Shown here in pieces: positions 43,271-59,147 of a stretch of DNA of 64,000 nt. The notes under the pieces are model-generated. The model did no database searches. It was given only the letters and a program-made list of their open reading frames with translations, and was not told the origin of the DNA. How positions within the stretch are numbered: position 1 is the first letter of the stretch; each line of letters starts with the position of its first letter. Made by a program: the position numbers and the translations under genes. The stretch comes from Macrostomum hystrix (taxonomy: Eukaryota > Animalia > Platyhelminthes), in assembly GCA_950097015.1 (NCBI GenBank), contig CATNEN010000010.1, positions 3,286,001-3,350,000 of the forward strand, read 5' to 3'.

Positions 43271-44539
43271 TCAGTAGCGCTCATCCTGAATTCGAACCCG
43301 ACGTATGCCGCGCTCGAGCCCCGCACCGCTGTCGTAGCCGTGGTCGTAGTCGTTTACACCGCGCCTAAGATAGGCATCGTACAGTCGATGCCGCAGCGGC
43401 GACTCGCCGCCAGTCCCGTGGTAGCCGTCGCGAGAGCAGCCGGACACGTAGGGCGAGGGAGCCCGGTAATCGTTCAGTTCTTCGCCGAACTCATAGCCGT
43501 AGTCTCGACCAGCGCCGGCGCCGCCGTAGGGTCCGCGGCCTGATGTCGGCATCGATCGGCGAAGGTCGGATGAGGATCGGCTGCGCCGGAGGCTGCTCGA
43601 CGACGCCGGCAGCCGGACAGGGCCGTGCGGCCCGCCCAGGCGCGTCAGCGTGTCGTGAAGTACCGGCTTCCGGCCGACCAAACTCTTGTCCACGTGTCGA
43701 ACGACGAACGGAGGCCGGCCGTCGACACGCACAGGAGCTGCCGGTGTCACTGGCGGTTGCCTTCGACGTAGACGAATCGCTCGGCGCTCCTCGGCTTCGA
43801 GATCGTCGCCATTGGCGCGCAGGGCGGCGGCCGCAGCGGCGGAGGCGAAGCGGCCTGGTGAGCGGCAGCGCATGACGGCTGCCAGAGTCTGCCGGCTGTA
43901 GCCAGGGCGCACGCGTCTTTGGCGTCGACGTCGGAGGCGTCGAGTAGGCGACAGCGTCGGTCCAGGGTCCGCATCTTCGTCATCTTCGTCGTCGTAATAG
44001 TCGTCGTCGTCGAGGCCGTCGCTGTCACCTCCGAGCAGATCAACTTCACAAGCCTGCGGTGTTGTCTGCTCAATGACGGCTCGAGTGCTGAACTCGAAGC
44101 GGGGCCCGGGACCAATGAAATCTACGGTGCGAATCAGCTGAGCCTGCCGGCTGCCGCGGTGGACAGCACAGCCGCTGGCCAGAGCCGCCGCAGTGCCGCC
44201 GGCCGGGTAGAGAAAATCTCTAGCACCGGCATCAAAATAGGCAAGCAGGCAGCCGCCCAGGTAGACATCCGTGACCTGGCGCAGCTCCACTGTCACTGGC
44301 AGCTCGTCCAGCATCTCCAATACGTCCTGAGGGTCGGCAGCCGGCCAGAACAGCTTTTCGAATACGAATCTCTCGTGCAGGCAGAGAGGAAATGCCGGCT
44401 CAACTAGTCGAGTTCGCTTGGCCTGGCCGAACATTTCGACCGTGAGGTAGAGCGGGTCTCGGTTGGGCAGCCATGTCGATGGCGAGGCAACGGACTCGAT
44501 GCTCACCTCCACGGTGCACTTGAAGCCTCTGGGCGGCAT
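43271..44539 (-). CDS. SPATA6: SPATA6 family protein, intronless CDS
   Basis: MPPRGFKCTVEVSIESVASP...LYLTVEMFGQAKRTRLVEPAFPLCLHERFVFEKLF...DPQDVLEML...ARDFLYP and PFVVRHVD match the SPATA6 N-terminal domain and conserved motif. Confidence 0.9.
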   Translation of the reverse strand: MPPRGFKCTVEVSIESVASPSTWLPNRDPLYLTVEMFGQAKRTRLVEPAFPLCLHERFVFEKLFWPAADPQDVLEMLDELPVTVELRQVTDVYLGGCLLAYFDAGARDFLYPAGGTAAALASGCAVHRGSRQAQLIRTVDFIGPGPRFEFSTRAVIEQTTPQACEVDLLGGDSDGLDDDDYYDDEDDEDADPGPTLSPTRRLRRRRQRRVRPGYSRQTLAAVMRCRSPGRFASAAAAAALRANGDDLEAEERRAIRLRRRQPPVTPAAPVRVDGRPPFVVRHVDKSLVGRKPVLHDTLTRLGGPHGPVRLPASSSSLRRSRSSSDLRRSMPTSGRGPYGGAGAGRDYGYEFGEELNDYRAPSPYVSGCSRDGYHGTGGESPLRHRLYDAYLRRGVNDYDHGYDSGAGLERGIRRVRIQDERY

Positions 44540-47500
44540 CGCTCTGGTCTTGTAGGGTAACTGCAAGCATGTACCATTGCAGCTGTTTTAGAATAGCTAT
44601 AGAATGTAATATAGAATATAGAGCTAGGTAGAAGAACATATAGTGACTCCAAAGTTATATAATAATAATTTAAACAAGAACAACTATAATAATATGACCA
44701 TTAGATACAGAGTACATTAGTAACTCTTAAAATAAGTCAGAAAAGTGTGTACTATGCAACAAAATTCCATCATTCAATCAGTCAAAACATTTTACTGATG
44801 CACTAGCAATATGAGTAGTTTAATGTTTAGTGCACCTCTACCACCTACTGATAATATAGAACTTCGTACTTCAAAAGCAGGATATACTTCAGTATTTAAG
44901 TATTTTTTGAAATTTTACAATGTCTGACAAAAAGCTAAGCTAACATTCACATTTCCACTAATTAACTGATGAAAGGCCAAATATCACTTACGATACATAG
45001 AGAGAGATGCTTTAATCAAAGATAATTCTAACACACCAGCATCAAAGGCAATGCTAAGAAAATCAATCACTCAGTTATTTTGTGAGATATAATCTAATTG
45101 ATATCTACAACAAACAGATAGACCTGTGTGCTTAAAAAATCCAGCAATTTTCAAACAGAAAATAGTGTGTTCGCTTTCTTATGGCCACAGATTTGTGGCC
45201 TATGAGTCCTATGGCTTACTGGTATGATACTTAAGTTGTATTCAACTTTGAGTTGAAGTTTTATAAAATGTGTATTACTCAGAAAAATATAAGAAGTGGA
45301 AAGAATATTTTAACATCAACAATAAAAATTATAATAGCAGATATAAACTATAATTTAGCTATTATTATTTACTATTAGTCCCGTGCTCGTTTACACTTCT
45401 GTAATTCTATCGACAAAAACACATAATGTAAACGAATTTAAAAAGGCGCTAAAATTCTCATGAACTCTATACGTTGTCTTAGTTATTTGTTTTAATAGTT
45501 GAATTTTGAACGTCAGAAATAACCATGTTTTCTGGAAACGCCCCTTTTTACAAATTCGCACGTGACGTTATTCATGTGTTTTAGATTCTGCAACTACTTA
45601 AAGAAACTCGTATATTTTAAGCTTAAGAATTTTTTAACCTGGAGTGCAAAATTGTATACTTATAAATATTTATGTTTCTATGCGTCGTCATTACACAATC
45701 TGAACTCTTTTTGCTATCAATATTTATACTGCTAATTTCAATATCAATTATGTCAGTCTGACTTCAATTCAATGTCAGGAGCTCAGGACTGACTCAAGCA
45801 TTATGTGCTTACCTGATTCAGTAGGTAACTTCTTACACAATAGTTTCAGGGCCTACTTGTCTTGGATGATAAATTTTTAATAAGATAATTAGCTGAATGG
45901 GCAATGTTCCTGCATTCCTGCATTCCTGCATTATATTATTTCGATCCGAATTGTAAGCAAGCAAACAAAAGCAAGTTTATTAAAGCAGTAAAGCAGGTCA
46001 TGGCGCTTGAGAACCAGTAATACACAGCATAGTAATGGGTCAGTCAGCCAGTACAGAAAGTGGCCAGAACTTGAGTCGGTGCCAGAGGAACTTGCTGAGG
46101 TAGGCCCTAGGAGTCAAAAGGTATCTGGACACTTCGTCATCTTAAAACTTTGTCATCCAGATGACGATCTGTCCAATATCTCAGAGGGTGGATGGCAAAG
46201 AGATTTAGACTTGTGGACACTTCATCATCTATAAAACAAAAGTTTTCAAAGTTAGAACAGAACTACCCCTCCCTCCTCACATTGTGTTGGCACCTGGCAT
46301 GTGTCAAAAAAGTTGTCTCTGGCCATTGGCCAACCTCTGTGACCTTGAGATCACTTACTGCGAGCTGTGCTACTGAAAATGATGCTGAGTCAAATATTCA
46401 TTTTCATGGATTGTCAAATAGTCAGCATGGTACCAGTGATTCAGATGATTTAGACATTTCCCAATCAGACACTACCATAAGCTGGCTAAGGAGTGCAGAA
46501 TTTTTACTTAGTTCAAAATTTTCCTAAACAAGCCTACTAATATTGAAGAAAGGCAGAGAGCTTTTTATTTATTTATATAGAATAGAACCTACATTCCCTT
46601 CCCTATTTGAATAGACTGTGGTATTATCATGGACACCACCAAGCCTCCGTTTGCTTGTTGTCATGGCATAGCATTTAGGCAATGCCATGTATAGTGGCCA
46701 GTGCAATCCCAAGCAAGGATATGAAGTATGTAAATGGAGGAAGTCAACCCCAGTGCAATGTCCCTTAGGATTTGAAGATTGCTATGATGTACCATCTATG
46801 CCCTACCTTTAAGTAAAACTATTTTGTCACAATTTTTGGGATCAAAATGTTTCTAAAGTATATGGATTTTAGTGATTTAGATCATAATTAATATGTTTTT
46901 GAACCTATATAAATATATGTAATTATACATAGTTATTTTTGTGCACTTTTTGGAGCTTACTAGGCCTATAATTAATGTTTTTTAATGCTGTAAATATACC
47001 CATAAGCTATTCCTTTTAGGATGTGGTAAACTGCTTTTGTGTTTGTAATTTTCTGGAGTTCTTTATAATATATGAACTATAATATACTTTCAAATATACT
47101 CGTATATACTGTTATTCTACCTCTGTCAACTCAGTGTAAGGTTACTAGTTATATTCAAGACTAGCTTGAGCCTGTAATTTCTATTTTTCAGAAGGCTAAT
47201 TGGAATCAGTTAAATTCTAAGTGTACCAAAAGTTATTACAACTTATTATTACACAAATTTCAATAAATAATGGTAAAAAATAAGTTTATTATTCCAATCT
47301 ATGTACAATAGTTCATATCCATGTTTTTTGTTCTGATTAATAATATCCTAGACCTAATTTAAGCCTAGTTGACCAATCTACCATCCAGGGGCTAGCAGAA
47401 TGGGCGGCAACACCTCCCCGCTGCATCCAAAGGATGCCCCTGCAGCTAAGCTAAGTCAAAGACCAATCTACCATAGCAAGGTGTTGTATTTAATTTACAA

Positions 47501-47854
47501 TAGTATTAACAGATAGCTAAATAATCAAGCTACTAACTAATATAGCTTAAGGTAAATAAAGCGGTGTATAACAATAAAGTCTATTAGTTATGTTTAAAGC
47601 TTTAAGCATGCCAACTGATAATCTAAGTAAGCAGTGGATACAGTTGGATAAGAATAGCACTTGCATTTCAAGTTGACTTTGAAAGTGACTTCAGCATATA
47701 ATTTTATAGGCCTTAGTATAGCTATATTTCAAGGCTTTGTAAGGGTAGTTGATAGGTTATGCCTAAGTGAATAGCAAAAAATATCTAATTTAATATTAAA
47801 AGTTTACTTCTTCAAACATAAAAGAATTTATTATTCGTTTGTTAGTAGTATGTA

Positions 47855-47875
47855 ACGCACATATTGCTCTTTCAG
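47855..47875 (+). promoter_or_regulatory. Candidate trans-splice acceptor of ACAA2
   Basis: ATATTGCTCTTTCAG precedes the first coding codon, below a long AT-rich stretch; no convincing upstream ATG exon was found. Confidence 0.55.
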
Positions 47876-50790
47876 GCTGCCCTATCCAAAACCGGCGTCT
47901 TTATTGTCGCCGCTAAGCGCACGCCATTTGGCGCATTCGGCGGCTCATTGAAGGACCACTCGGCCACTGACCTGGCCGAGGCCGCCTCCAGAGCCGCTCT
48001 GGAGGCCAGCGGAGGCGCCCAAGGACGCCGTCAGCTCCGTTGTGTTTGGCAACGTCATCCAGAGCCAGCGAGACACCGCCTTCCTATCCCGCCATGTGGC
48101 CGTCCGCCTTGGCCTGCCAATCTCCACGCCGGCCTTCAACGTGAACCGACTGTGCGGCTCCGGCTTCCAGTCCATTGTCAGCGGCACCAACGAGATTCTA
48201 GTTGGCGACAGCAGTATTGTGATCGCCGGCGGAGCCGAGAGCATGAGCGGCACGCCCTACGCTGTCTGGGGCGTCCGGTTTGGCACCAAACTGGGCACGG
48301 ACTACCAGCTAGTGGACCTGCTCTGGCACGGACTCATCGATCAGCAGATCAAGACGCCAATGGGTGTGACCGCGGAGAACTTGGCCGAAAAGTACAAACT
48401 GACCAGGCAGCAGTGCGACGAATTCGCCGTGCTGAGCCAGAGCCGCTGGCGAAAGGCGAACGCCGACGGCGCCTTCAAAGCCGAAATCGTGCCGATGCAG
48501 GTAAAACTGTTCTTATTTAAAATAAACAGTTTCTTTTTTGGAAACCCAAATTCAGCACTTTGTCCTGAATTCAAAGATCCTAATCCGTAGTCCAAGATTT
48601 GGATCCTTAACTCCTAGATAATGATCCGTAACGATATTTCGATCTCTAAAGTCAAAGATCCCGATTTTTATATTCCAGATCCCGATCCATTAAGACTAAA
48701 ATCCCGATCCATAACTCCAAGATCCCTAATGCTTAACTCCAACATCCCGAATCCTTAACTCCAAGATCCCTATTGCTTAACTCCAAGATCCCTAATGCTT
48801 AACTCCAAGATTCCTAATGCTTAACTCCAAGATCCCTAATGCTTAACTCCAAGATCCCTAATGCTTAACTCCAAGATCCCTATGCTGAACTCCAAGATCC
48901 CGATCCTTAACTCCAAGATCCCTAATGCTTAACTCCAAGATCCCGAATCCTTAACTCCAAGATCCCTATGCTGAACTCCAAGATCCCGATCCATAACTCC
49001 AAGATCCCTAATGCTTAACTCCAAGATCCCGAATCCTTAACTCCAAGATCCCTATTGCTTAACTCCAAGATCCCTAATGCTTAACTCCAAGATCCCTAAT
49101 GCTTAACTCCAAGATCCCGAATCCTTAACTCCAAAATCCCGAATCCTTAACTCCAAGATCCCTAATGCTTAACTCCAAGATCCCTATGCTTAACTCCAAG
49201 ATCCCTATGCTTAACTCCAAGATCCTTAATGCTTAACTCCAAGATCCCTAATGCTTAACTCCAAGATCCCTAATGCTTAACTCCAAGATCCCGAATCCTT
49301 AACTCCAAAATCCCGAATCCTTAACTCCAAGATCCCTAATGCTTAACTCCAAGATCCCTATGCTTAACTCCAAGATCCCTATGCTTAACTCCAAGATCCC
49401 GATCCATATCTCCAAGATCCCGAATCTTTAACTCCAAGATCCCTAATGCTTAACTCCAAGATCCCGATCCATAACTCCAAGATCCCTATGCTTAACTCCA
49501 AGATCCTTAATGCTTAACTCCAAGATCCCTAATGCTTAACTCCAAGATCCCTAATGCTTAACTCCAAGATCCCGAATCCTTAACTCCAAAATCCCGAATC
49601 CTTAACTCCAAGATCCCTAATGCTTAACTCCAAGATCCCTATGCTTAACTCCAAGATCCCTATGCTTAACTCCAAGATCCCGATCCATATCTCCAAGATC
49701 CCGAATCTTTAACTCCAAGATCCCTAATGCTTAACTCCAAGATCCCTATGCTTAACTCCAAGTTCCCGATCCATAACTCCAAGATCCCTAATGCTCAACT
49801 CCAAGATCCCGATCCTTAACTCCAAGATCCCTAATGCTTAACTCCAAGATCCCGAATCCTAAAACTCCAAGATCCCGATCCATAACTCCAAGATCCCGAT
49901 CCATAACTCCAAGATCCTGGATCCATAATTTCAAAATCCTGATCATTAACTCCAACTTCCTGATATTCTTCCTTTCGATTCTGGTCCTTAACTCCCAAGC
50001 TCTCTTGATTCTGATCTTCTAAATCCCGGTCCTAAATTCCATGATTACAAAATCCGAAACTTCAAGATCGAGAATCCCAAGTTTCGAATCTTAAATACTT
50101 ACATCGACCCGATCTAAGCTTTAGAGATTTCTGTACTAATCCTTAGGATCTTGATCCCCATCTCCCTTGCCAACAAGCTCGATTCCCATAATCGAACAGA
50201 AATAAACTTGCCGTTGCTGCCAGGTGAAGGGCAAGAAGGGCCCGGTGGAGTTCGCCACAGACGAGCATCCGCGCGAGGCCACGGCGGAGGCCATGGCCAA
50301 GCTGCCGCCTGTGTTCAAGAAGAATGGCGTTGTCAACGCCGGCAACGCCTCCGGCATCTGCGACGGCGCCGCAGCCGTTGTCCTGGCCTCCGAGTCGGCC
50401 GTCAAGCAGCACAAGCTGAAGCCGCTGGCCCGCCTGGTTGGCTACCACTTTGTCGGCTGCGACCCCAGCATCATGGGCATCGGGCCGGTGCCCGCCGTGC
50501 AGGGCCTGCTGGCCAAGACCAACCGCAGCCTGGCCCAAATCGACCTGGTCGAAGTGAACGAAGCCTTCGCTTCGCAGTACCTGGCCGTTGAACAGGAGCT
50601 GGGACTTGACCGCGCCGTTACCAATGTCAACGGTGGCGCCATCGCTCTGGGCCACCCGGTTGGCGCCAGCGGCAGCCGCATTATGGGCCATCTGGCACAC
50701 GAGCTGCACAGGCGCAATAAGAAGCTGGCCATTGGCACGGCCTGCATTGGCGGCGGTCAGGGCATCGCCATCATGATTGAGCGCTGCTAG
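47876..50790 (+). CDS. ACAA2: Mitochondrial 3-ketoacyl-CoA thiolase; exons 47876-48500 and 50224-50790; apparent +1 frameshift at about 48014; no genomic ATG at the start of the first exon
   Basis: GVFIVAAKRTPFG, NRLCGSGFQS (catalytic Cys), EVNEAFA, GAIALGHPVGASG, CIGGGQGIA. The intron joins PMQ|VKGKKG. Confidence 0.93.
48690..49920. repeat. About 22-bp minisatellite in the ACAA2 intron (TTAACTCCAAGATCCCTAATGC)
   Basis: Tandem copies with degenerate edges. Confidence 0.93.
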
Positions 50791-51204
50791 CAATAACTGC
50801 GTCTGGAATTATTGTCCATCTTTTAGAATTTATACCTTCGAAAGGTTCCGAAAGTCTATTTCTGGTGAATGATTTTGATAACAAAGTTTTATTCTACCAT
50901 GGTCGCTTGACAAAATCTAGTTTCGCATTATCTTAGGAAAGTTCATAATTTTTGGTGAAGCGGAAATGATCATATTCTTAAATAATTTTGACTGCAGTTT
51001 TTTGTCAAAATTGTTTTGCAACATAAAAAATTTTATATTCGTTATAAATTCGTTTGTTGATTCGTTTGCTTGTTTAATTGTACGAAAATAGAATAATTTA
51101 CAATTGAATAAATGATGCAATTTAAACGATAATGAGATATTACTGTTGTTTTCCTCTCCTTATAAAAATAACGCCAGAGTAGGTTTCATTTATTACGCAC
51201 GTCT

Positions 51205-53040
51205 GGGTTAGATTTATCACACCTGAGCTTGAATTATCACCCCTGAGCTAGATTCATCACACCTGAGCTAGATTTATCACACCTGAGCTAGATTTATCAC
51301 ACCTGAGCTAGATTTATCACACCTGAGCTAGATTTATCACACCTGAGCTAGATTTATCACACCTGAGCTTGATTTATCAAACCTGAGCTAGATTTATCAC
51401 ACCTGAGCTAGATTTATCACGCCTGAGCTAGATTTATCACACCTGAGCTAGATTTATCACACCTGAGCTAGATTTATCACACCTGAGCTAGATTTATCAC
51501 ACCTGAGCTAGATTTATCACACCTGAGCTAGATTTATCACACCTAAGCTAGATTCATCACACCTGAGCTAGATTTATCACGCCTGAGCTAGATTTATCAC
51601 ACCTGAGCTAGATTTATCACATTTGAGCTAGATTTATCACGCCTGAGCTAGATTTATCACCCCTGAGCTAGATTTATCACGCCTGAGCTAGATCCATCAC
51701 ATCTGAGCTAGATTTATCACATCTGAGCTAGATTTATCACACCTGAGCTTGATTTATCAAACCTGAGCTATATTAATCACACCTGAGCTAGATTTATCAC
51801 ACCTGAGCTAGATTTATCACGCCTGAGCTAGATTCATCACACCTGAGCAAGATTTATCACGCCTGAGCTAGATTTATCACGCCTGAGCTAGATTTATCAC
51901 ACCTGAGCTAGATTTATCACATTTGAGCTAGATTTATCACGCCTGAGCTAGATTTATCACCCCTGAGCTAGATTTATCACGCCTGAGCTAGATCCATCAC
52001 ATCTGAGCTAGATTTATCACATCTGAGCTAGATTTATCACACCTGAGCTTGATTTATCAAACCTGAGCTATATTAATCACACCTGAGCTAGATTTATCAC
52101 ACCTGAGCTAGATTTATCACGCCTGAGCTAGATTCATCACACCTGAGCAAGATTTATCACGCCTGAGCTAGATTCATCACACCTGAGCTAGATTTATCAC
52201 ACCTGAGCTAGATTTATCACACCTGAGCTAGATTTATCACACCTGAGCTAGATTTATCACACCTGAGCTAGATTTATCACACCTAAGCTAGATTCATCAC
52301 ACCTGAGCTAGATTTATCACGCCTGAGCTAGATTTATCACACCTGAGCTAGATTTATCACATTTGAGCTAGATTTATCACGCCTGAGCTAGATTTATCAC
52401 CCCTGAGCTAGATTTATCACGCCTGAGCTAGATTCATCACATCTGAGCTAGATTTATCACATCTGAGCTAGATTTATCACACCTGAGCTTGATTTATCAA
52501 ACCTGAGCTATATTAATCAAACCTGAGTTAGATTTATCACGCCTGAGCTAGATTCATCACCCCTGAGCTAGATTCATCACACCTTGAGCTAGATTTATCA
52601 CGCCTGAGCTAGATTCATCACATCTGAGCTAGATTTATCACATCTGAGCTAGATTTATCACGCCTGAGCTTGATTTATTACGCAAATCTGGGTTAGATTA
52701 TCACGCCTGAGCTAGATTTATCCACCTGAGCTAGATTTATCACGCCTGAGCTAGATTTATCACGCCTGAGCTAGATTTATTACGCACGTCTGGTTTAGAT
52801 TTATCACACCTGAGCTAGATTTATCATACCTGAGCTTGATTTATCACACCTGAGCTAGATTTATCACGCCCGAGCTAGATTTATCACGCCTGAGCTACAT
52901 TTATTACGCATGAGCTAGATTAATCACAGCTGAGTAGATTCATCAGGCCTGAGATAGATTCATCACACCGGAGTGAGTTTATTGCTCCTGAGCAATATTT
53001 ATTACGCCACTGCTAGTTTTTTTTTCACACCTGAGCTAGA
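51205..53040. repeat. 20-bp minisatellite (CTGAGCTAGATTTATCACAC) between ACAA2 and TOPBP1
   Basis: Tandem copies; a 300-bp higher-order duplication is visible at 51691 and 51991. Confidence 0.96.
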
Positions 53041-53266: not shown

Positions 53267-56200
53267 ATGGGCTTGTCAGGCCAGCAGCAGCAGAAGCAGC
53301 AGCCGCCTTCATCCTCGTCGTCAGTGTCAACGTCATCCTCAACAACCGCCGCCAGTCTGGGCACTGTGTACTTTGTTGAGCCAATCGGCGGCAGCCTGTA
53401 CGGCCTGCTGCGCGAAGCCTTCGGCCTCATCGAAGGCGAGGCCAGCTGCCTGGCCGCCTGGCTGCCGGAAAGTCAGCTGCCAGCCGCCCTGGCCAAACTG
53501 CAGCAGCGTGGCGGCTCCAACAGCCGGGCCTACTTTGTGTTCGAAGAATTTCAGGGCGCCGCCTACGAGAAGGCGGCCGCGGCGCCCGGCTGCCGCCTGT
53601 TTGGTGCCCAGCTGCTGCTGAACTACCTTCGCGAAGACCTGCCGCTGCCCAAATGGGAAGTGCCGCTGTTCTCGGCTGCGCTCAAGGATTTACAGGCTAG
53701 TGCAGATTTTGTGTCAGTTTGTTTTACTGATTACCTGTAGGTCTTACAAGTAGTTCCTCCTTTTTCTCTAGTGTCTCTTATGTCACAGTTCTATCTCTCC
53801 CCTGTAGCAGGTGTCTCCCCTGTCAACGGTGTCTCCCCTGTCTCCGGTGTCTCCCCTATCACAGGTGTCTCCCCAGATCACAGGTGTCTCCCCTGTCACC
53901 GGTGTCTCCCCAATTACAGGTGTCTTCCTTGTCACAAGTGTCTCCCCTGTCACAGGTGTCTCCCCTATCACAGGTGTCTCCCCTGTCACCGGTGTCTCCC
54001 CTATCACAGGTGTCTTCCTTGTCACAAGTGTCTCCCCTGTCACAGGTGTCTCCCCTGTCTCCGGTGTCTCCCCTATCACAGGTGTCTCCCCTGTCTCCGG
54101 TGTCTCCCCTATCACAGGTGTCTCCCCTATCACAGGTGTCTCCCCTATCACAGGTGTCTCCCCTATCACAGGTGTCTCGCCTATCACTATCTATCTATCT
54201 ATTTGCAGGGGGGCCCGGGGCACTTGTCGCACAAGCGACGGAGCGGCACGCCCCCAGACCGGCGAACTAGGCGCTTTTGCGCCCATCGCGCCGCCTCCCC
54301 TGAGCAGGCACCACACACAGCAGCACAGACCAGCCGGGGAGGGCAGGAGGCACCCAGAATAGGCAGCAGTGTCCCCCACCCCAGCCCCACACGCACATAG
54401 CAGACCAAGCCGGAAGGCTGATAAGAAATCAGTCCTCTGGGGGGGCCGGGTGATGAGTGTACACTTATCCAATCGCGCTGACGGAAGTCCAGAAAGCGCG
54501 CGGCGGTGTACACCCGCACTCCAGCCACCCCCCGCAAGGTCTCACGCCCCAGCGCCAACGCACACAACTCACACAACGCAGAACAGGCACACAGAAAGGT
54601 AGGAGCGAAGCTATTATTTCAAGCTTTGATTGCACGAAATATGGTGCACCTCCGCCGGTCGCTACTGTCCAAACCCCCCAACAAGTCCCGAAATTAATCG
54701 TGACTTAAAGGGTGAATCGAACTAGCGTCCTTTGGAGTGCGAGGCAGCGACGTTAGCCGCTGACCCACTCGCCCCCTTCTCGCCTATCACACGTGTCTCC
54801 CCTTTCACAGGTGTCTCCCTTGTCACTGGTGCTTCCCACCTTTCGGACATGTCCCTTGTTTCTAGTCTGTAGACACGGCTAATACATGTATATTAATACA
54901 GGTAAAACATGTATGAATGTATGACAGGTGTTGTCAATTTTGGCTGGTGTGATACTTAAAGCGTATGTTTATCCTTGTGTTAGCCTAATGCGCCACCCGC
55001 CACTCGCTCACCCGCAGATCTCTGTGTCGGGCATCGAAGATCGGTCCGCTGTGAAACGCAAAATACTCATGCTTCACGGCAACTTTCAGCCCGACCTCAC
55101 CGACGATGTCAACGTGCTGATCACCACCTGCACCAATTCCAAGAAATACCTGGTTGCTAAGCAGTTCAATATTCGAGTCCTGCTGCCCGAATGGCTTGAC
55201 GCCCTGCTGGTCTGGTCCCGGAACCACAGCCCGGTTGAGCCCTTTGGCCTGCCGGACTTCAGCAAGTACGTTGTGCCACCATTTCACAATGTCACAGCTA
55301 CCACAACCAATTTTGAGCCGGCCGAGAAGAATTTGATCCAGCGCCTGATTGAGAAGAACGGCGGCCGCTACAACCGGCTCATTGGTTATTGGCGAGTGCA
55401 CCCACCTCATTGTGAGCCGGCCCACCGGACAGAAGTTCCAGTACGCTCGCAACTGGAAAGTGAACTGCGTCAGCATGCAATGGGTGGTGGACAGCGACCG
55501 CAAGCAGTGCTGCCTGGACATTGCCGACTACCTGGTCACGGAGGACGCCAAGGCTGGCGCCAAGCCCAGCAACAGTTCCACTCCGGACAAGCAGCGAATG
55601 CCGCTGACTGGCAAGGCCGCGCCCGATGTCAGCTGCCTGCTGGACCCGGACCGGACTCGCGTCAACGAGACGGTGTCCGTCGGCGCTGGGGAGCGCTCCG
55701 TCTGCTATCCGTCATCCACTTCTGTGGCCGCTGTCGGACCTGTCGACAAGGAGAACAACTTCAGGGTGCCGGAGCCACCGCCACAGCCGCTTCGAGAGCT
55801 TCGCCTGCTGATCGCTTGCGGTCAGCCGGCTGAAATCCAACGCCTAGCGCTGATTGCGCGTCAACTCGGTGCCCAAGTTGCTTCAGCTGCCGCCGCGGCT
55901 TCCAATGTCGACGGCGAGGTAGACGTTGCCGTTGTGCTGGAAGCTGACCGGCTGGACGAGTTGCCGTCGGCCTTTCGATCCGGTGTCTTGGTGTCCAAGC
56001 AGTGGCTGCTGGATTGCTCCGAGAAGCAGCGACGCTTGGCCTGCGAGTCCTATGCGTTGCTATGGCGACAGCAGCAGTCGGCCACCGATGTGAATGATGT
56101 CAGTCAGAACCGGGACGCTGACGAGACCACGGTGAATCGCACGGCGATTGCCGCGAACGCAGCTGCGGCTGAAATGCTGGAGGAAAGCCTTAACATTCTG

Positions 56201-59147
56201 TGCGACTATGTCCGAGAGGAGGAGGCGCAGCGGCAGCAGCAGCAACAAGAGGCTGATTGTGAAGAGGCAGATGAGGAGACCCAGCTGCCGCAGGCGCAAA
56301 TGTCTGTAGCTGAAATGTCCACAGCTGCAGGCGTCATACCGGAGACGGAGCCCGCTGACGAGGCCGAAAATGGCGCTCCAGACACCCAGACATTCCTGGC
56401 CGGCCGTCGGGTTGGCATCCTCGGCCTGGAGCCGGCGGCTGCCTCAGCGGCTGCCCGAACCATCGCCCGGCTTGGCGGTCAGCTTGCCTCAGATTCCGAC
56501 TCCGCTGCCGAGCTGGACGTTGCTGTACTGCCTGTTGTCTATCAACGAGGCAGCGGCGGAGCCAGTGAGGCCTGCCTACTCGCGGCTGACGAGCTCGTGA
56601 CGGACGCTTGGCTAGCGGACTGCATTGAAGGTCCCGCAGTGCTGCTCGTGGATCCGGACTCAGAACCCTGGTACCGGCCCAGTGTCCTGCCTGCTGGCGC
56701 CTCTTCTAGGCCGCTGTCCGGCGTTGTACTGTGCGTCAGCGGCTTCGAAGTTCGAGATCGGGAGCGCGTGGCGGCTCTGGGCCGCGGCCTGGGCGCCATT
56801 GTACAGGACAATCTGAGCAGGGTGAGCAAGCCAGACAGACAGCTTCGCATCACCACCCACCTGGTGCTGGCAGCCGCGAACGGGCAGAAATACTCTGCCG
56901 CCATGAGCTGGGGCAGCGTCCAGTGCGTCAGCAAGCACTGGCTGGGCGAGTGCGGCCGGCTCGGACGACGCGCGCCGGAGATCGAATTTCACATCGACTC
57001 GCTGGCCGCCTACGAGGAACGAAAGCGTCGGGAGGCCGCCGCTGCTGCAGCAATGTCCGCAAACTCAATGTCATCAGCGGCTGCGGCAACAACAACGGCT
57101 GTTGCTATGGCAACGTCTACGATGGCTTCCGACTGCGTCCTGCCCGCAACCCAGCCATCTCCGATGCAGCAGCATCGGCAGGCCCAGCCGGTCAATCCTA
57201 ATCGAGCAGCCATGGACAGCCCCAGTGTGTTCCTCCACAGCGGCTACCGGCCTCGCTTCGATCTGCAGGCCCTGAGCGCCGCCCTGCGCAGCCCGGCGCC
57301 CGGACCTCCTGCCGGCACGCCAGACTCGGTGCAATACGCCCGAGCCAGAAGAAACATTCGCCAGACCTGCCGGGCCCAGGGCAAGCGGGAGCTGCTGGCC
57401 CTGCTACCGCCTCAGTCATCGGCTGCGGGCAACGCAGCTTCGTCAGCCGCTTCGTCTGTAGCCGAAGCCAACGGCGGCTTCGCCACGCCGCAGACGCCGC
57501 AGCAGGCGGCCGGCCTCCTGTCCGGGGTCACTGTCTACCTGAGCACTCGCCTGGGCGTCCAGAGATCCCGACTTGCCCAGATCGCCGAGTCCTTGGGCGC
57601 CCGGTCTCGCTGGCAGTGGGATCCGCGCTCTTGCACCCACTTCGTCTCCGAAGGTCCGCCAGCCCAGGATGCCGAGCTTCGCCGGGCGATGCAGCCAACG
57701 TCGCCGTCGTCAGCGTCACCCCGTCTAGTCAGCCCGGCCTGGCTGCTGCAGTGCAAACGGCTGCGGCGGCGACTTGACGAGCGCGACTTCCAGCCAACGA
57801 CCGATTCAGCGACCACGCCGCAGACTGGACAGACTCCGGTGCAGAGCCGGCACAACCGCCACCGCCACCACCACAACCCACCTCATTCCAATGCGCCTCA
57901 GCTAGAGAGACGAGAGTCGCGAGCCAGCCTTCAAGAGCTCAGCAGCAAACTCGACTGCTTTGGTGGAGTCGGAGGCGACAGGGGCGTCACAGATGATGCT
58001 GATGCGTTTGATGGTGCTGGTTCGCATCTGCTGCCGCACCCGCCGGTGCTGCAGCAGCCCCCGCTGCCGACAGTCGCCTGGCTCAGAATCGCGCGCGCCA
58101 GCTGCTGGACACTGAGCCCGATGACCCAGCCATCGGCGGTCCCGAGCTCGCCGGCTCAATCGCCCCAGCCTCGTCGGCTGTTGGAGTCGCAACCGCTACA
58201 GTCGCCTCCGCCAGCGCATCGGCTGCATCCGCCGCTGCCGCCGCTGCTGTTCGACCTCACGAGCCACTGCTAGTTGGTTGGCGCTACACCGACTCGGATG
58301 GCGCCGCCCCCCGCCGCAGCCGCCTCCGCCCTGCCTGCTCAAGCCGCCGCCGCAGCCGCCTCCGACCGAACCGCCTCGCCTCTTCCAGCTGACCGGCCTG
58401 AGCGGCCCCGAGCGCGACCGACTGGTCAGCCAGATTGCCTGCCTCGGTGGCTCCCTGGTCTCGGCCGAGTCTGACGATCCCACTCACCTTGTCTGCGGTC
58501 GCCTATCGCGCAACGAGAAGCTGCTCCGCTGCGCCGCTGCTGGCCGCTGGGTTCTCCGCTCCGGCTACGTGGAAGCCTCGGCCAGAGCCGGCCGCTGGCT
58601 GCCAGAGGAGCCCTACGAGTGGGGCAGCGGCGCCTCCGCTGACGCCACCGCTGATGCTGAGACCCGCGCCCTGGCGTCTGCCTGCCGTCGCTGGCGCCAG
58701 CGCGGCGGTCGGGCATTTCGCGACTGGCGCGTCGCCCTGCTCTGCCCGCCGGACAAGCTGGCCAGCTTTCGCCGACTGCTGGAGGCTGGCGGCGGCCGGG
58801 TCATCTTCGAGGGCCCGAATTACCAGCTGGCCGCCTCCTCCGGTCTCACCCACGCCTTCTGCCAGCGCGGCAACTACGCCGGCTGCGCAGACACGCTGGC
58901 CGGCACCGGCGCCCACCTGGCCTGGCTGCGCATCGACTTTATCGCCGCCCACCTCGTTGACGAGAAGCCGCCGGATGCGGCGTCCTACCGACTGCCGACT
59001 GTCAGGAAGCGGCAGGGCGGAGGCGGCGGCAGCGGCGGTGGAGCCGACGATGACGAGCTGAGCGACTCGACATCGACGACTTCCAGTGCTCGAGACGGCG
59101 GCGGTTCCGTGGCCACCCGAGCGTCGAAACGAATTCGTCGGCGTTAA
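53267..59147 (+). CDS. TOPBP1: TOPBP1 homolog; exon 53267-53695 (GC donor) and exon 55018-59147 with apparent 1-bp indels at about 55375, 58058-58062 and 58307-58312
   Basis: Ordered BRCT0-8: GCRLFGAQLL; LKDLQ|ISVSG; PPFHNVTATTTN; LSGVVLCVSGFEVRDRERV...THLV; DSPSVFL..YRPRFD; LSGVTVYLSTRL; FQLTGLSG...THLVCGRLSRNEKLL...EEPYEWG; AFRDWRV. Confidence 0.93.
53795..54187. repeat. 18-bp minisatellite (CAGGTGTCTCCCCTGTCA) in the TOPBP1 intron, resuming at 54778-54830
   Basis: Tandem copies interrupted by the SINE B insertion. Confidence 0.93.
54188..54777 (-). mobile_element. Full-length 590-bp tRNA-derived SINE (family B) with a 13-bp target-site duplication
   Basis: Minus 5' end AGGGGGCGAGTGGGTCAGCGGCTAACG...CTAGTTCGATTC (A and B boxes); 3' (ATAG)n tail. 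The direct repeat TCTCGCCTATCAC lies at 54175-54187 and 54778-54790. Confidence 0.85.

What the first reader, a model, noticed from the sequence alone, without database searches (positions are those of the whole stretch)
47860..47920. ACAA2 has no start codon of its own; the spliced-leader AUG may supply it
Seen: after the acceptor TTTCAG (47875) the exon starts in phase 0 with GCT GCC CTA TCC AAA ACC GGC GTC TTT (AALSKTGVFIVAAKRTPFG). Adding one Met gives MAALSKTGVFIV, matching the ACAA2 N-terminus (MALLRGVFVV). No in-frame ATG occurs before the catalytic region and no convincing upstream exon was found. Established: flatworm spliced leaders end in AUG, which can serve as initiator Met. Inference: translation of this enzyme depends on trans-splicing.
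Basis: partly seen in the sequence, partly recalled or inferred. Interest (0 to 1): 0.8.

Follow-up and report, generated by a model that had tools for sequence, protein, structure and literature searches.

The report
Spliced leader supplies thiolase start codon
In this Macrostomum flatworm the mitochondrial fat-burning enzyme ACAA2 has no start codon in its own gene, and RNA assemblies show the AUG-ending trans-spliced leader joined in frame just before its first codon, which is a solid new example of a mechanism already known in flatworms.

Summary
A two-exon thiolase gene (exon 1 47876-48500, exon 2 50224-50790, + strand) begins directly after the acceptor TTTCAG (47870-47875). It has no ATG of its own. 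An in-frame TAG lies 30 nt upstream, and the next in-frame Met is residue 124, past the catalytic Cys94.

RNA-derived contigs from four public runs (two studies) all carry ...GCGAAGACTCAATTTATTGCATG joined to GCTGCC at 47876. These 23 letters are the 3' end of the published Macrostomum spliced leader, and its last 18 letters are absent from the window. The leader's ATG is in frame and gives a 397-aa protein. Its N-terminus lines up with residue 1-5 of human ACAA2, the best solved-structure match for all three coding pieces.

No contig joins an upstream cis exon to exon 1, including the ATG|GTAAAA at 47270.

The window has one G too many at 48014/48015, which breaks the frame. All four runs lack it, so it is probably an assembly error.

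The mechanism is known (Cheng et al. 2006, Schistosoma). This scan has already noted about 42 such cases on other DNA of this genome, several confirmed. This is a new member of a known kind, of low-to-moderate interest.

The parts
44567..47869 (+). Upper bound of the outron and promoter region. AT-rich spacer between the divergent SPATA6 gene and the ACAA2 acceptor. It holds no exon joined to ACAA2.
   Evidence: GC is 0.33. Depth is zero in all 4 runs except two repeat-like patches (46120-46273, 47400-47459), which are 90-95% alike with loose ends on both sides. No tRNA or Rfam hit.
47270..47275 (+). Not used.
   Evidence: The site is present. No contig covers it or joins it to 47876 in any of 4 runs.
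47846..47848 (+). In-frame TAG in the outron, 30 nt before exon 1.
   Evidence: There is no ATG between this stop and the acceptor.
47870..47875 (+). Trans-splice acceptor TTTCAG.
   Evidence: It fits the published M. lignano trans-splice acceptor motif [T/C]TNCAG (PMC8629364). The SL-to-exon junction lies here in contigs of 4 runs.
47876..48500 (+). Exon 1, coding from its first base (codon 2, Ala, onward). Encodes the N-terminal targeting region and the catalytic Cys of the thiolase.
   Evidence: Pfam Thiolase_N hits at 4e-8 and 9e-45. Human ACAA2 4c2j is the best match. Contigs run 47875-48497 with 0 other letters in X6.
48014..48015 (+). GG in the window where transcripts have a single G. 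The one extra base breaks the frame in the assembly.
   Evidence: table 4: 1 letter is left out at 48014 in all 4 runs; a gapless alignment to human ACAA2 needs 13 codons where the window has 13 codons plus 1 nt; removing one base gives a single 397-codon frame.
48501..50223 (+). The only cis intron (GT..AG, phase 0). It holds a 22-nt tandem array.
   Evidence: A joint skipping 1723 nt is seen in all 4 runs (table 5). Donor CAG|GTAAAA and acceptor GCCAG|GTG. Tandem array at 48677-49917.
50224..50790 (+). Exon 2 coding part, with stop TAG at 50788-50790. Covers the end of Thiolase_N plus Thiolase_C, with the catalytic His and Cys region.
   Evidence: Pfam Thiolase_C 1.9e-46. 4c2j match at 1.3e-75. 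ORF listing.
50791..50964 (+). 3' UTR, as far as the contigs reach.
   Evidence: Contigs end between 50891 and 50964 (table 8).

Best explanation
The gene encodes the flatworm orthologue of mitochondrial 3-ketoacyl-CoA thiolase (ACAA2). Its genomic coding sequence starts at codon 2.

The primary transcript begins somewhere in the AT-rich region upstream, which forms the outron. The spliceosome joins the roughly 35-nt Macrostomum spliced leader, which ends in AUG and is encoded elsewhere in the genome, to the acceptor TTTCAG at 47875/47876.

This places the leader's terminal AUG directly in frame before GCU GCC CUA. The mature mRNA then reads M-AALSKTGVFIVAAKRTPFG... and encodes a 397-aa enzyme.

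Without trans-splicing, no AUG is available before residue 124, beyond the catalytic cysteine. Production of active enzyme therefore depends on trans-splicing.

Shown here: the SL-to-exon junction, its reading phase, the lack of any other start codon, and the completeness of the N-terminus by homology. Inferred: that ribosomes initiate at the SL AUG. This rests on experiments in Schistosoma mansoni (Cheng et al. 2006, as cited in PMC12582326 and PMC9851317).
For:: in four runs the exon 1 contig carries the SL 3' end (up to 22 nt plus G) joined at 47876. The same contigs skip the GT..AG intron. Nothing covers 47637-47835.

the loose letters equal the published Macrostomum SL, which ends in ATG.

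the SL 3' 18-mer is absent from the 64-kb window at up to 2 mismatches, so the leader comes from another locus.

there is an in-frame TAG at 47846 and no ATG before the acceptor.

SL ATG plus exon 1 (minus one base) plus exon 2 gives 397 codons in one frame. The next Met is at residue 124, after Cys94.

the product is a thiolase and human ACAA2 is the best solved relative for all three coding pieces (48.9, 181.7 and 256.6 bits). The human N-terminus aligns to the exon start within 2 residues.

the acceptor fits the [T/C]TNCAG trans-splice motif.

the SL AUG is documented as an initiator for more than 40 S. mansoni cDNAs.
Against: There is no ribosome profiling, proteomic or reporter evidence for initiation at the SL AUG in this species or for this gene.

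The evidence is assembled contigs, not raw reads. A rare cis-spliced or unspliced isoform would not be seen, and relative usage cannot be measured.

Position -3 of the SL AUG is U, a weak Kozak context, although +4 is G here.

The window copy itself carries a frameshifting extra base. If that base is real, this copy is not the one that makes the enzyme.
Confidence: 0.88

Rival explanations
1. A cis-spliced upstream micro-exon, such as ATG|GTAAAA at 47270 or ATG|GT at 46427, supplies the start codon in the main mRNA. The SL form would then be a minor by-product.
For: Two ATG|GT[AG] sites exist within 3.3 kb upstream. Contigs cannot exclude rare isoforms (notes).
Against: In all four runs the only sequence found joined to 47876 is the SL. 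The SL-bearing contig in X6 has depth 150. There is no coverage at 47270 or 46427 joined to exon 1. The patches at 46120-46273 and 47400-47459 are 90-95% alike with unrelated loose ends on both sides.
Confidence: 0.04
2. The window copy is a freshly broken duplicate in which the extra G at 48014/48015 is real. The transcripts would then come from an intact, almost identical paralogue elsewhere, which is plausible in a genus known for duplicated genomes. The SL-AUG mechanism would still apply, but to the other copy.
For: The frameshift is present in the window. All four runs also differ from the window at 50837 (T>A). M. lignano is a hidden polyploid with many duplicated genes (PMC10468722).
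Against: Apart from the one base, exon 1 is identical to the X6 contig over 623 nt. The change is a GG/G run-length difference, typical of long-read assembly errors. No DNA run was laid, so this rival is not excluded.
Confidence: 0.1
3. Translation starts inside the gene (Met124) or at a non-AUG codon of an unspliced transcript, such as TTG at 47864. The SL AUG would then be irrelevant.
For: An ORF from TTG 47864 is listed mechanically.
Against: A start at Met124 would remove the targeting N-terminus and the catalytic Cys94. No contig covers the outron next to the acceptor. A scanning ribosome meets the in-frame SL AUG first.
Confidence: 0.02

Closest known systems
SL 3'-terminal AUG used as initiator methionine in Schistosoma mansoni (Cheng, Cohen, Ndegwa and Davis, J Biol Chem 2006; cited in PMC12582326 and PMC9851317)
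   Same: The spliced leader ends in AUG. The acceptor lies exactly at codon 2 of a conserved protein. The recipient gene has no start codon of its own.
   Different: The species is a free-living, early-branching rhabditophoran flatworm (Macrostomum) rather than a parasite. The gene, ACAA2, was not found named in the accessible literature. Initiation was not tested experimentally here.
Macrostomum SL trans-splicing as annotated genome-wide (Wudarski 2017, PMC5730564; Ustyantsev and Berezikov 2021, PMC8629364; Wiberg 2023, PMC10468722)
   Same: Identical SL sequence, the same acceptor motif [T/C]TNCAG, and a conserved housekeeping gene as recipient.
   Different: Those papers count trans-spliced genes and operons. 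The passages I searched mention the terminal ATG only as a likely start codon (a figure legend in PMC10468722) and do not list genes that depend on it.
Human mitochondrial 3-ketoacyl-CoA thiolase ACAA2 (PDB 4c2j)
   Same: Same length (397 aa). The alignment is gapless across the repaired frameshift. The NRLCGSG catalytic Cys and the C-terminal GHP and CIGGGQG motifs are conserved. The N-terminus has the same form (G-V-F-[IV]-V-A-A-K-R-T-P-F-G).
   Different: The flatworm N-terminus is 2 residues longer, and its Met is not genomically encoded at the locus.
slORFs, open reading frames created by SL addition in nematodes, ascidians and euglenozoa (slORFfinder, PMC9851317)
   Same: The start codon is donated by the leader.
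   Different: In those cases the start is mostly a non-AUG NUG codon and the ORF is often new or alternative. Here a canonical AUG completes an ancient conserved ORF.

Membership tests
Flatworm mRNAs that take their initiator Met from the SL 3' AUG (Cheng et al. 2006 class) | A spliced leader ending in AUG is joined to the mRNA 5' end. | tested here: met
   table 7: the loose 5' letters in 4 runs, plus G at 47875, equal the published SL 3' end.
Flatworm mRNAs that take their initiator Met from the SL 3' AUG (Cheng et al. 2006 class) | The SL AUG is in frame with the conserved ORF, with no stop between them. | tested here: met
   The junction is ATG|GCT GCC. It gives a single 397-codon frame after dropping the base that the transcripts lack.
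Flatworm mRNAs that take their initiator Met from the SL 3' AUG (Cheng et al. 2006 class) | The mature mRNA has no other in-frame AUG that could give a functional protein. | tested here: met
   The next Met is residue 124, after the catalytic Cys94. The outron has an in-frame TAG and no ATG.
Flatworm mRNAs that take their initiator Met from the SL 3' AUG (Cheng et al. 2006 class) | Homology shows the protein is complete once one Met is added. | tested here: met
   Exon residue 6 aligns to native residue 5 of human ACAA2. Pfam Thiolase_N position 1 falls at exon residue 8. Total length is 397 aa.
Flatworm mRNAs that take their initiator Met from the SL 3' AUG (Cheng et al. 2006 class) | Ribosomes initiate at the SL AUG. 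| not testable with these tools
   This needs Ribo-seq, N-terminal proteomics or a reporter assay.
Thiolase family, ACAA2 subfamily | Thiolase_N and Thiolase_C domains with the catalytic Cys, His and Cys. | tested here: met
   Pfam hits above the curated cut-offs. NRLCGSG, GHP and CIGGGQG are present in the translation.
Thiolase family, ACAA2 subfamily | Closer to ACAA2 than to the ACAT or ACAA1 thiolases. | tested here: met
   Among solved structures, human ACAA2 4c2j is first for all three pieces by wide margins: 48.9 vs 30.3, 181.7 vs 120.5 and 256.6 vs 203.6 bits. No tree was built.
Thiolase family, ACAA2 subfamily | Mitochondrial location through an uncleaved N-terminal signal. | not testable with these tools
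   Only the resemblance of the N-terminus to human ACAA2 is seen.
Macrostomum spliced leader | Sequence identity to the published SL, and the leader is encoded away from the recipient gene. | tested here: met
   23 of 23 letters are identical. The 18-mer is absent from the window at up to 2 mismatches. The species cannot be told from the SL, because three Macrostomum species share it.

The most novel reading that the evidence does not exclude
ACAA2 may be one of many conserved housekeeping genes in Macrostomum that have lost their own start codon. The scan has about 42 such notes in this genome. In that case dependence on the SL AUG would already have been extensive in an early-branching free-living flatworm. 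That would explain why the 3' AUG is kept in nearly every flatworm spliced leader, and it would make trans-splicing an obligatory, possibly regulated, step for translating core metabolism.
Probability: 0.4. Interest if true: 0.45.

Novelty: new member of a known kind. Interest (0 to 1): 0.25.

Why it matters
Gene finders that require a genomic ATG will truncate or mis-start this enzyme, for example by starting at Met124 and losing the catalytic cysteine and the mitochondrial targeting end. Annotation of Macrostomum genomes therefore needs to add the SL ATG.

Biologically, the finding adds a core beta-oxidation enzyme to the set of genes whose translation is coupled to trans-splicing. It also extends a mechanism demonstrated in schistosomes to a free-living model flatworm in which transgenesis allows a direct test.

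It does not reveal a new mechanism.

Tried and rejected
Upstream cis exon. I looked for ATG|GT sites and found them at 46427 and 47270. I also looked for contigs joining upstream sequence to 47876 and found none. Rejected as the main form.

SL gene or SL-like exon in the window. There was no match to the SL 3' 18-mer at up to 2 mismatches.

Small RNA or tRNA in the GC-rich island at 47385-47460 or elsewhere in 44500-51500. ARAGORN and Rfam at E<=0.1 found nothing.

Species identification from the SL. This is not possible, because M. lignano, M. hystrix and M. cliftonense share the last 35 nt.

Prior mention of thiolase among SL-AUG genes. A paper search for spliced leader + thiolase + Schistosoma found nothing. 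Cheng et al. 2006 itself is not held.

Searches left out. The joined (spliced) protein model was translated only in a local script, to count residues and Met positions. The costly protein searches were not used because the family was already clear.

Full report
**Observation.** The window has TTTCAG at 47870-47875, followed from 47876 by GCT GCC CTA TCC AAA ACC GGC GTC TTT, which reads AALSKTGVFIVAAKRTPFG. Reading the same frame backwards from the acceptor gives TAG (47846) TAT GTA ACG CAC ATA TTG CTC TTT CAG. That is a stop with no ATG after it. GC content jumps from 0.22 to 0.60 exactly at 47876. Exon 1 is 63% GC, and the 3.3 kb between it and the neighbouring gene is 33% GC.

**The gene.**
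- Pfam finds Thiolase_N in 47876-48010 (profile positions 1-37, starting at exon residue 8).
- Pfam finds Thiolase_N again in 48042-48500 (positions 50-201).
- Exon 2 (50224-50790) holds the end of Thiolase_N plus all of Thiolase_C.
- Human mitochondrial 3-ketoacyl-CoA thiolase ACAA2 (PDB 4c2j) is the best solved relative of all three pieces by wide margins: 48.9, 181.7 and 256.6 bits.
- The 4c2j chain carries 20 extra residues, so its residue 25, aligned to exon residue 6, is native residue 5. The flatworm gene therefore lacks essentially only the initiator Met.
- One cis intron (48501-50223, GT..AG, phase 0) separates the two exons.

In the window, exon 1 is not one open frame. The thiolase reading moves to another frame between 48010 and 48042. 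Two independent lines show that the window has one base too many.
- All four RNA runs leave out one letter at 48014, which is GG in the window and G in the transcripts (table 4).
- Exon residue 44 (48005-48007) aligns to chain residue 63 of 4c2j, and the Phe at 48045-48047 aligns to chain residue 76. That is 13 codons of protein for 13 codons plus 1 nt of window DNA.

With that base dropped, SL-ATG plus exon 1 plus exon 2 make a single frame of 397 codons, the length of human ACAA2. The only Met before residue 124 is then the added one, and the catalytic Cys is residue 94 (local script only). The most likely cause is a run-length error of the assembly. A real, recent frameshift in a duplicated copy is not excluded, because no DNA run was laid.

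**RNA evidence.** One search for runs found nine holders in three studies. The shares of sampled words in the best runs (0.69-0.73) are close to the exon fraction of the query. This already suggested RNA that lacks the upstream 176 nt.

I laid the contigs of four runs (X1, X2 and X3 from one study, X6 from another; coded organisms A, B, C) on 45050-51000.
- Every run skips 48501-50223 at GT..AG, so the contigs derive from spliced RNA.
- No run covers 47637-47835.
- In every run the contig covering exon 1 starts at 47875 and is preceded by letters that do not lie on the window. These are GCGAAGACTCAATTTATTGCAT (X3, X6), AATTTATTGCAT (X1) and TTATTGCAT (X2).
- With the G at 47875 this reads ...TTGCATG|GCTGCC.

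The published 35-nt spliced leader of M. lignano is CGGTCTCTTACTGCGAAGACTCAATTTATTGCATG (PMC8629364). The leaders assembled for M. hystrix and M. cliftonense end in the same letters (PMC10468722, Table S3). The last 18 letters of the leader do not occur in the 64-kb window even with two mismatches, so the leader comes from another locus. The acceptor TTTCAG fits the motif [T/C]TNCAG reported for M. lignano trans-splice acceptors. The organism is therefore a Macrostomum species, but the leader cannot tell which one.

ATG|GTAAAA at 47270 is real, and a second ATG|GT lies at 46427. No contig covers either site or joins it to 47876. The only upstream patches with any coverage are 46120-46273 and 47400-47459. 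They are only 90-95% alike and run on into unrelated letters on both sides, differently in different runs. That is the signature of dispersed repeats transcribed elsewhere. Contigs drop rare variants, so a minor cis isoform cannot be excluded. The SL form is the one assembled in all runs, at depth 150 in X6.

**Mechanism.** The pre-mRNA starts somewhere in the AT-rich spacer shared with the divergently oriented SPATA6 gene. Its 5' part is discarded as an outron, and the leader is joined at 47876. The leader's terminal AUG, about 33 nt from the cap, is the first AUG a scanning ribosome meets. It is in frame with the thiolase and has G at +4.
- Shown here: the junction, its phase, the lack of any alternative start, and N-terminal completeness.
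- Inferred: actual initiation at that AUG. This rests on S. mansoni, where the SL AUG is in frame in 28% of trans-spliced transcripts and more than 40 cDNAs need it (Cheng et al. 2006, as summarised in PMC9851317, and PMC12582326). I could not read the 2006 paper itself.

**Novelty.** The mechanism is textbook for parasitic flatworms. For Macrostomum, the searched passages of these papers describe the leader, its acceptors and operons. They mention the terminal ATG only as a likely start codon and give no list of dependent genes. I found no mention of a thiolase among such genes. Within this scan the same pattern has been noted about 42 times on other DNA of this genome, and several cases (CHMP6, NDUFA5, SFMBT, PPP2R3C) were confirmed by follow-up agents. 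I did not re-test those. One of them names the species as M. hystrix, which I could not verify. This finding is thus a well-supported new member of a known kind. Its main practical value is for annotation, because gene finders need to add the SL ATG.

**Limits.**
- The joined spliced model was not sent to any search tool. The exons were searched apart by reference, so full-length relatives in the large protein collections were not examined and conservation of the missing ATG in other flatworms is unknown.
- No raw reads were available, so isoform proportions, transcript starts and strand were not measured.

Noticed in passing
window 48014-48015: The assembly has GG where the transcripts of four runs have a single G. 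This breaks the ACAA2 frame. A gapless alignment to human ACAA2 also needs one base fewer. It is probably an assembly run-length error, and automated annotation would call a pseudogene or a split gene here.
   Followed up: partly
window 50837 and 50643: All four RNA runs read A instead of T at 50837 (3' UTR). Three runs read T instead of C at 50643, a synonymous change (Ile ATC to ATT). These are strain differences or assembly errors.
   Followed up: partly
window 48677-49917: The ACAA2 intron holds a tandem array of a 22-nt unit (TAACTCCAAGATCCCTAATGCT), about 55 copies, with an 86-nt higher-order period. It accounts for most of the intron's length.
   Followed up: no
window 51209-51500 (may run on): A second tandem array with a 20-nt unit (TAGATTTATCACACCTGAGC), at least 14 copies at 94% match, lies just downstream of the ACAA2 3' end.
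   Followed up: no
window 46120-46273 and 47400-47459: These are short patches in the AT-rich spacer, the second a GC-rich island. RNA contigs match them at only 90-95%, and the contigs continue into unrelated sequence on both sides. They are probably fragments of dispersed repeats expressed elsewhere. No tRNA or Rfam match.
   Followed up: partly
window 43271-44566 (- strand): A SPATA6-family gene (Pfam PF14909, E 6e-33) is oriented head-to-head with ACAA2. The two may share the 3.3-kb AT-rich spacer as a bidirectional promoter region.
   Followed up: no
window 53267-58270 (+ strand): A TopBP1-like gene with several BRCT domains (PTCB-BRCT, BRCT, and a weak BRCT0 hit) lies downstream of ACAA2 on the same strand. 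Between its parts, 53771-54400 is a long array of short repeats that is open in several frames (CLPCHR / GVSPVT-like).
   Followed up: no
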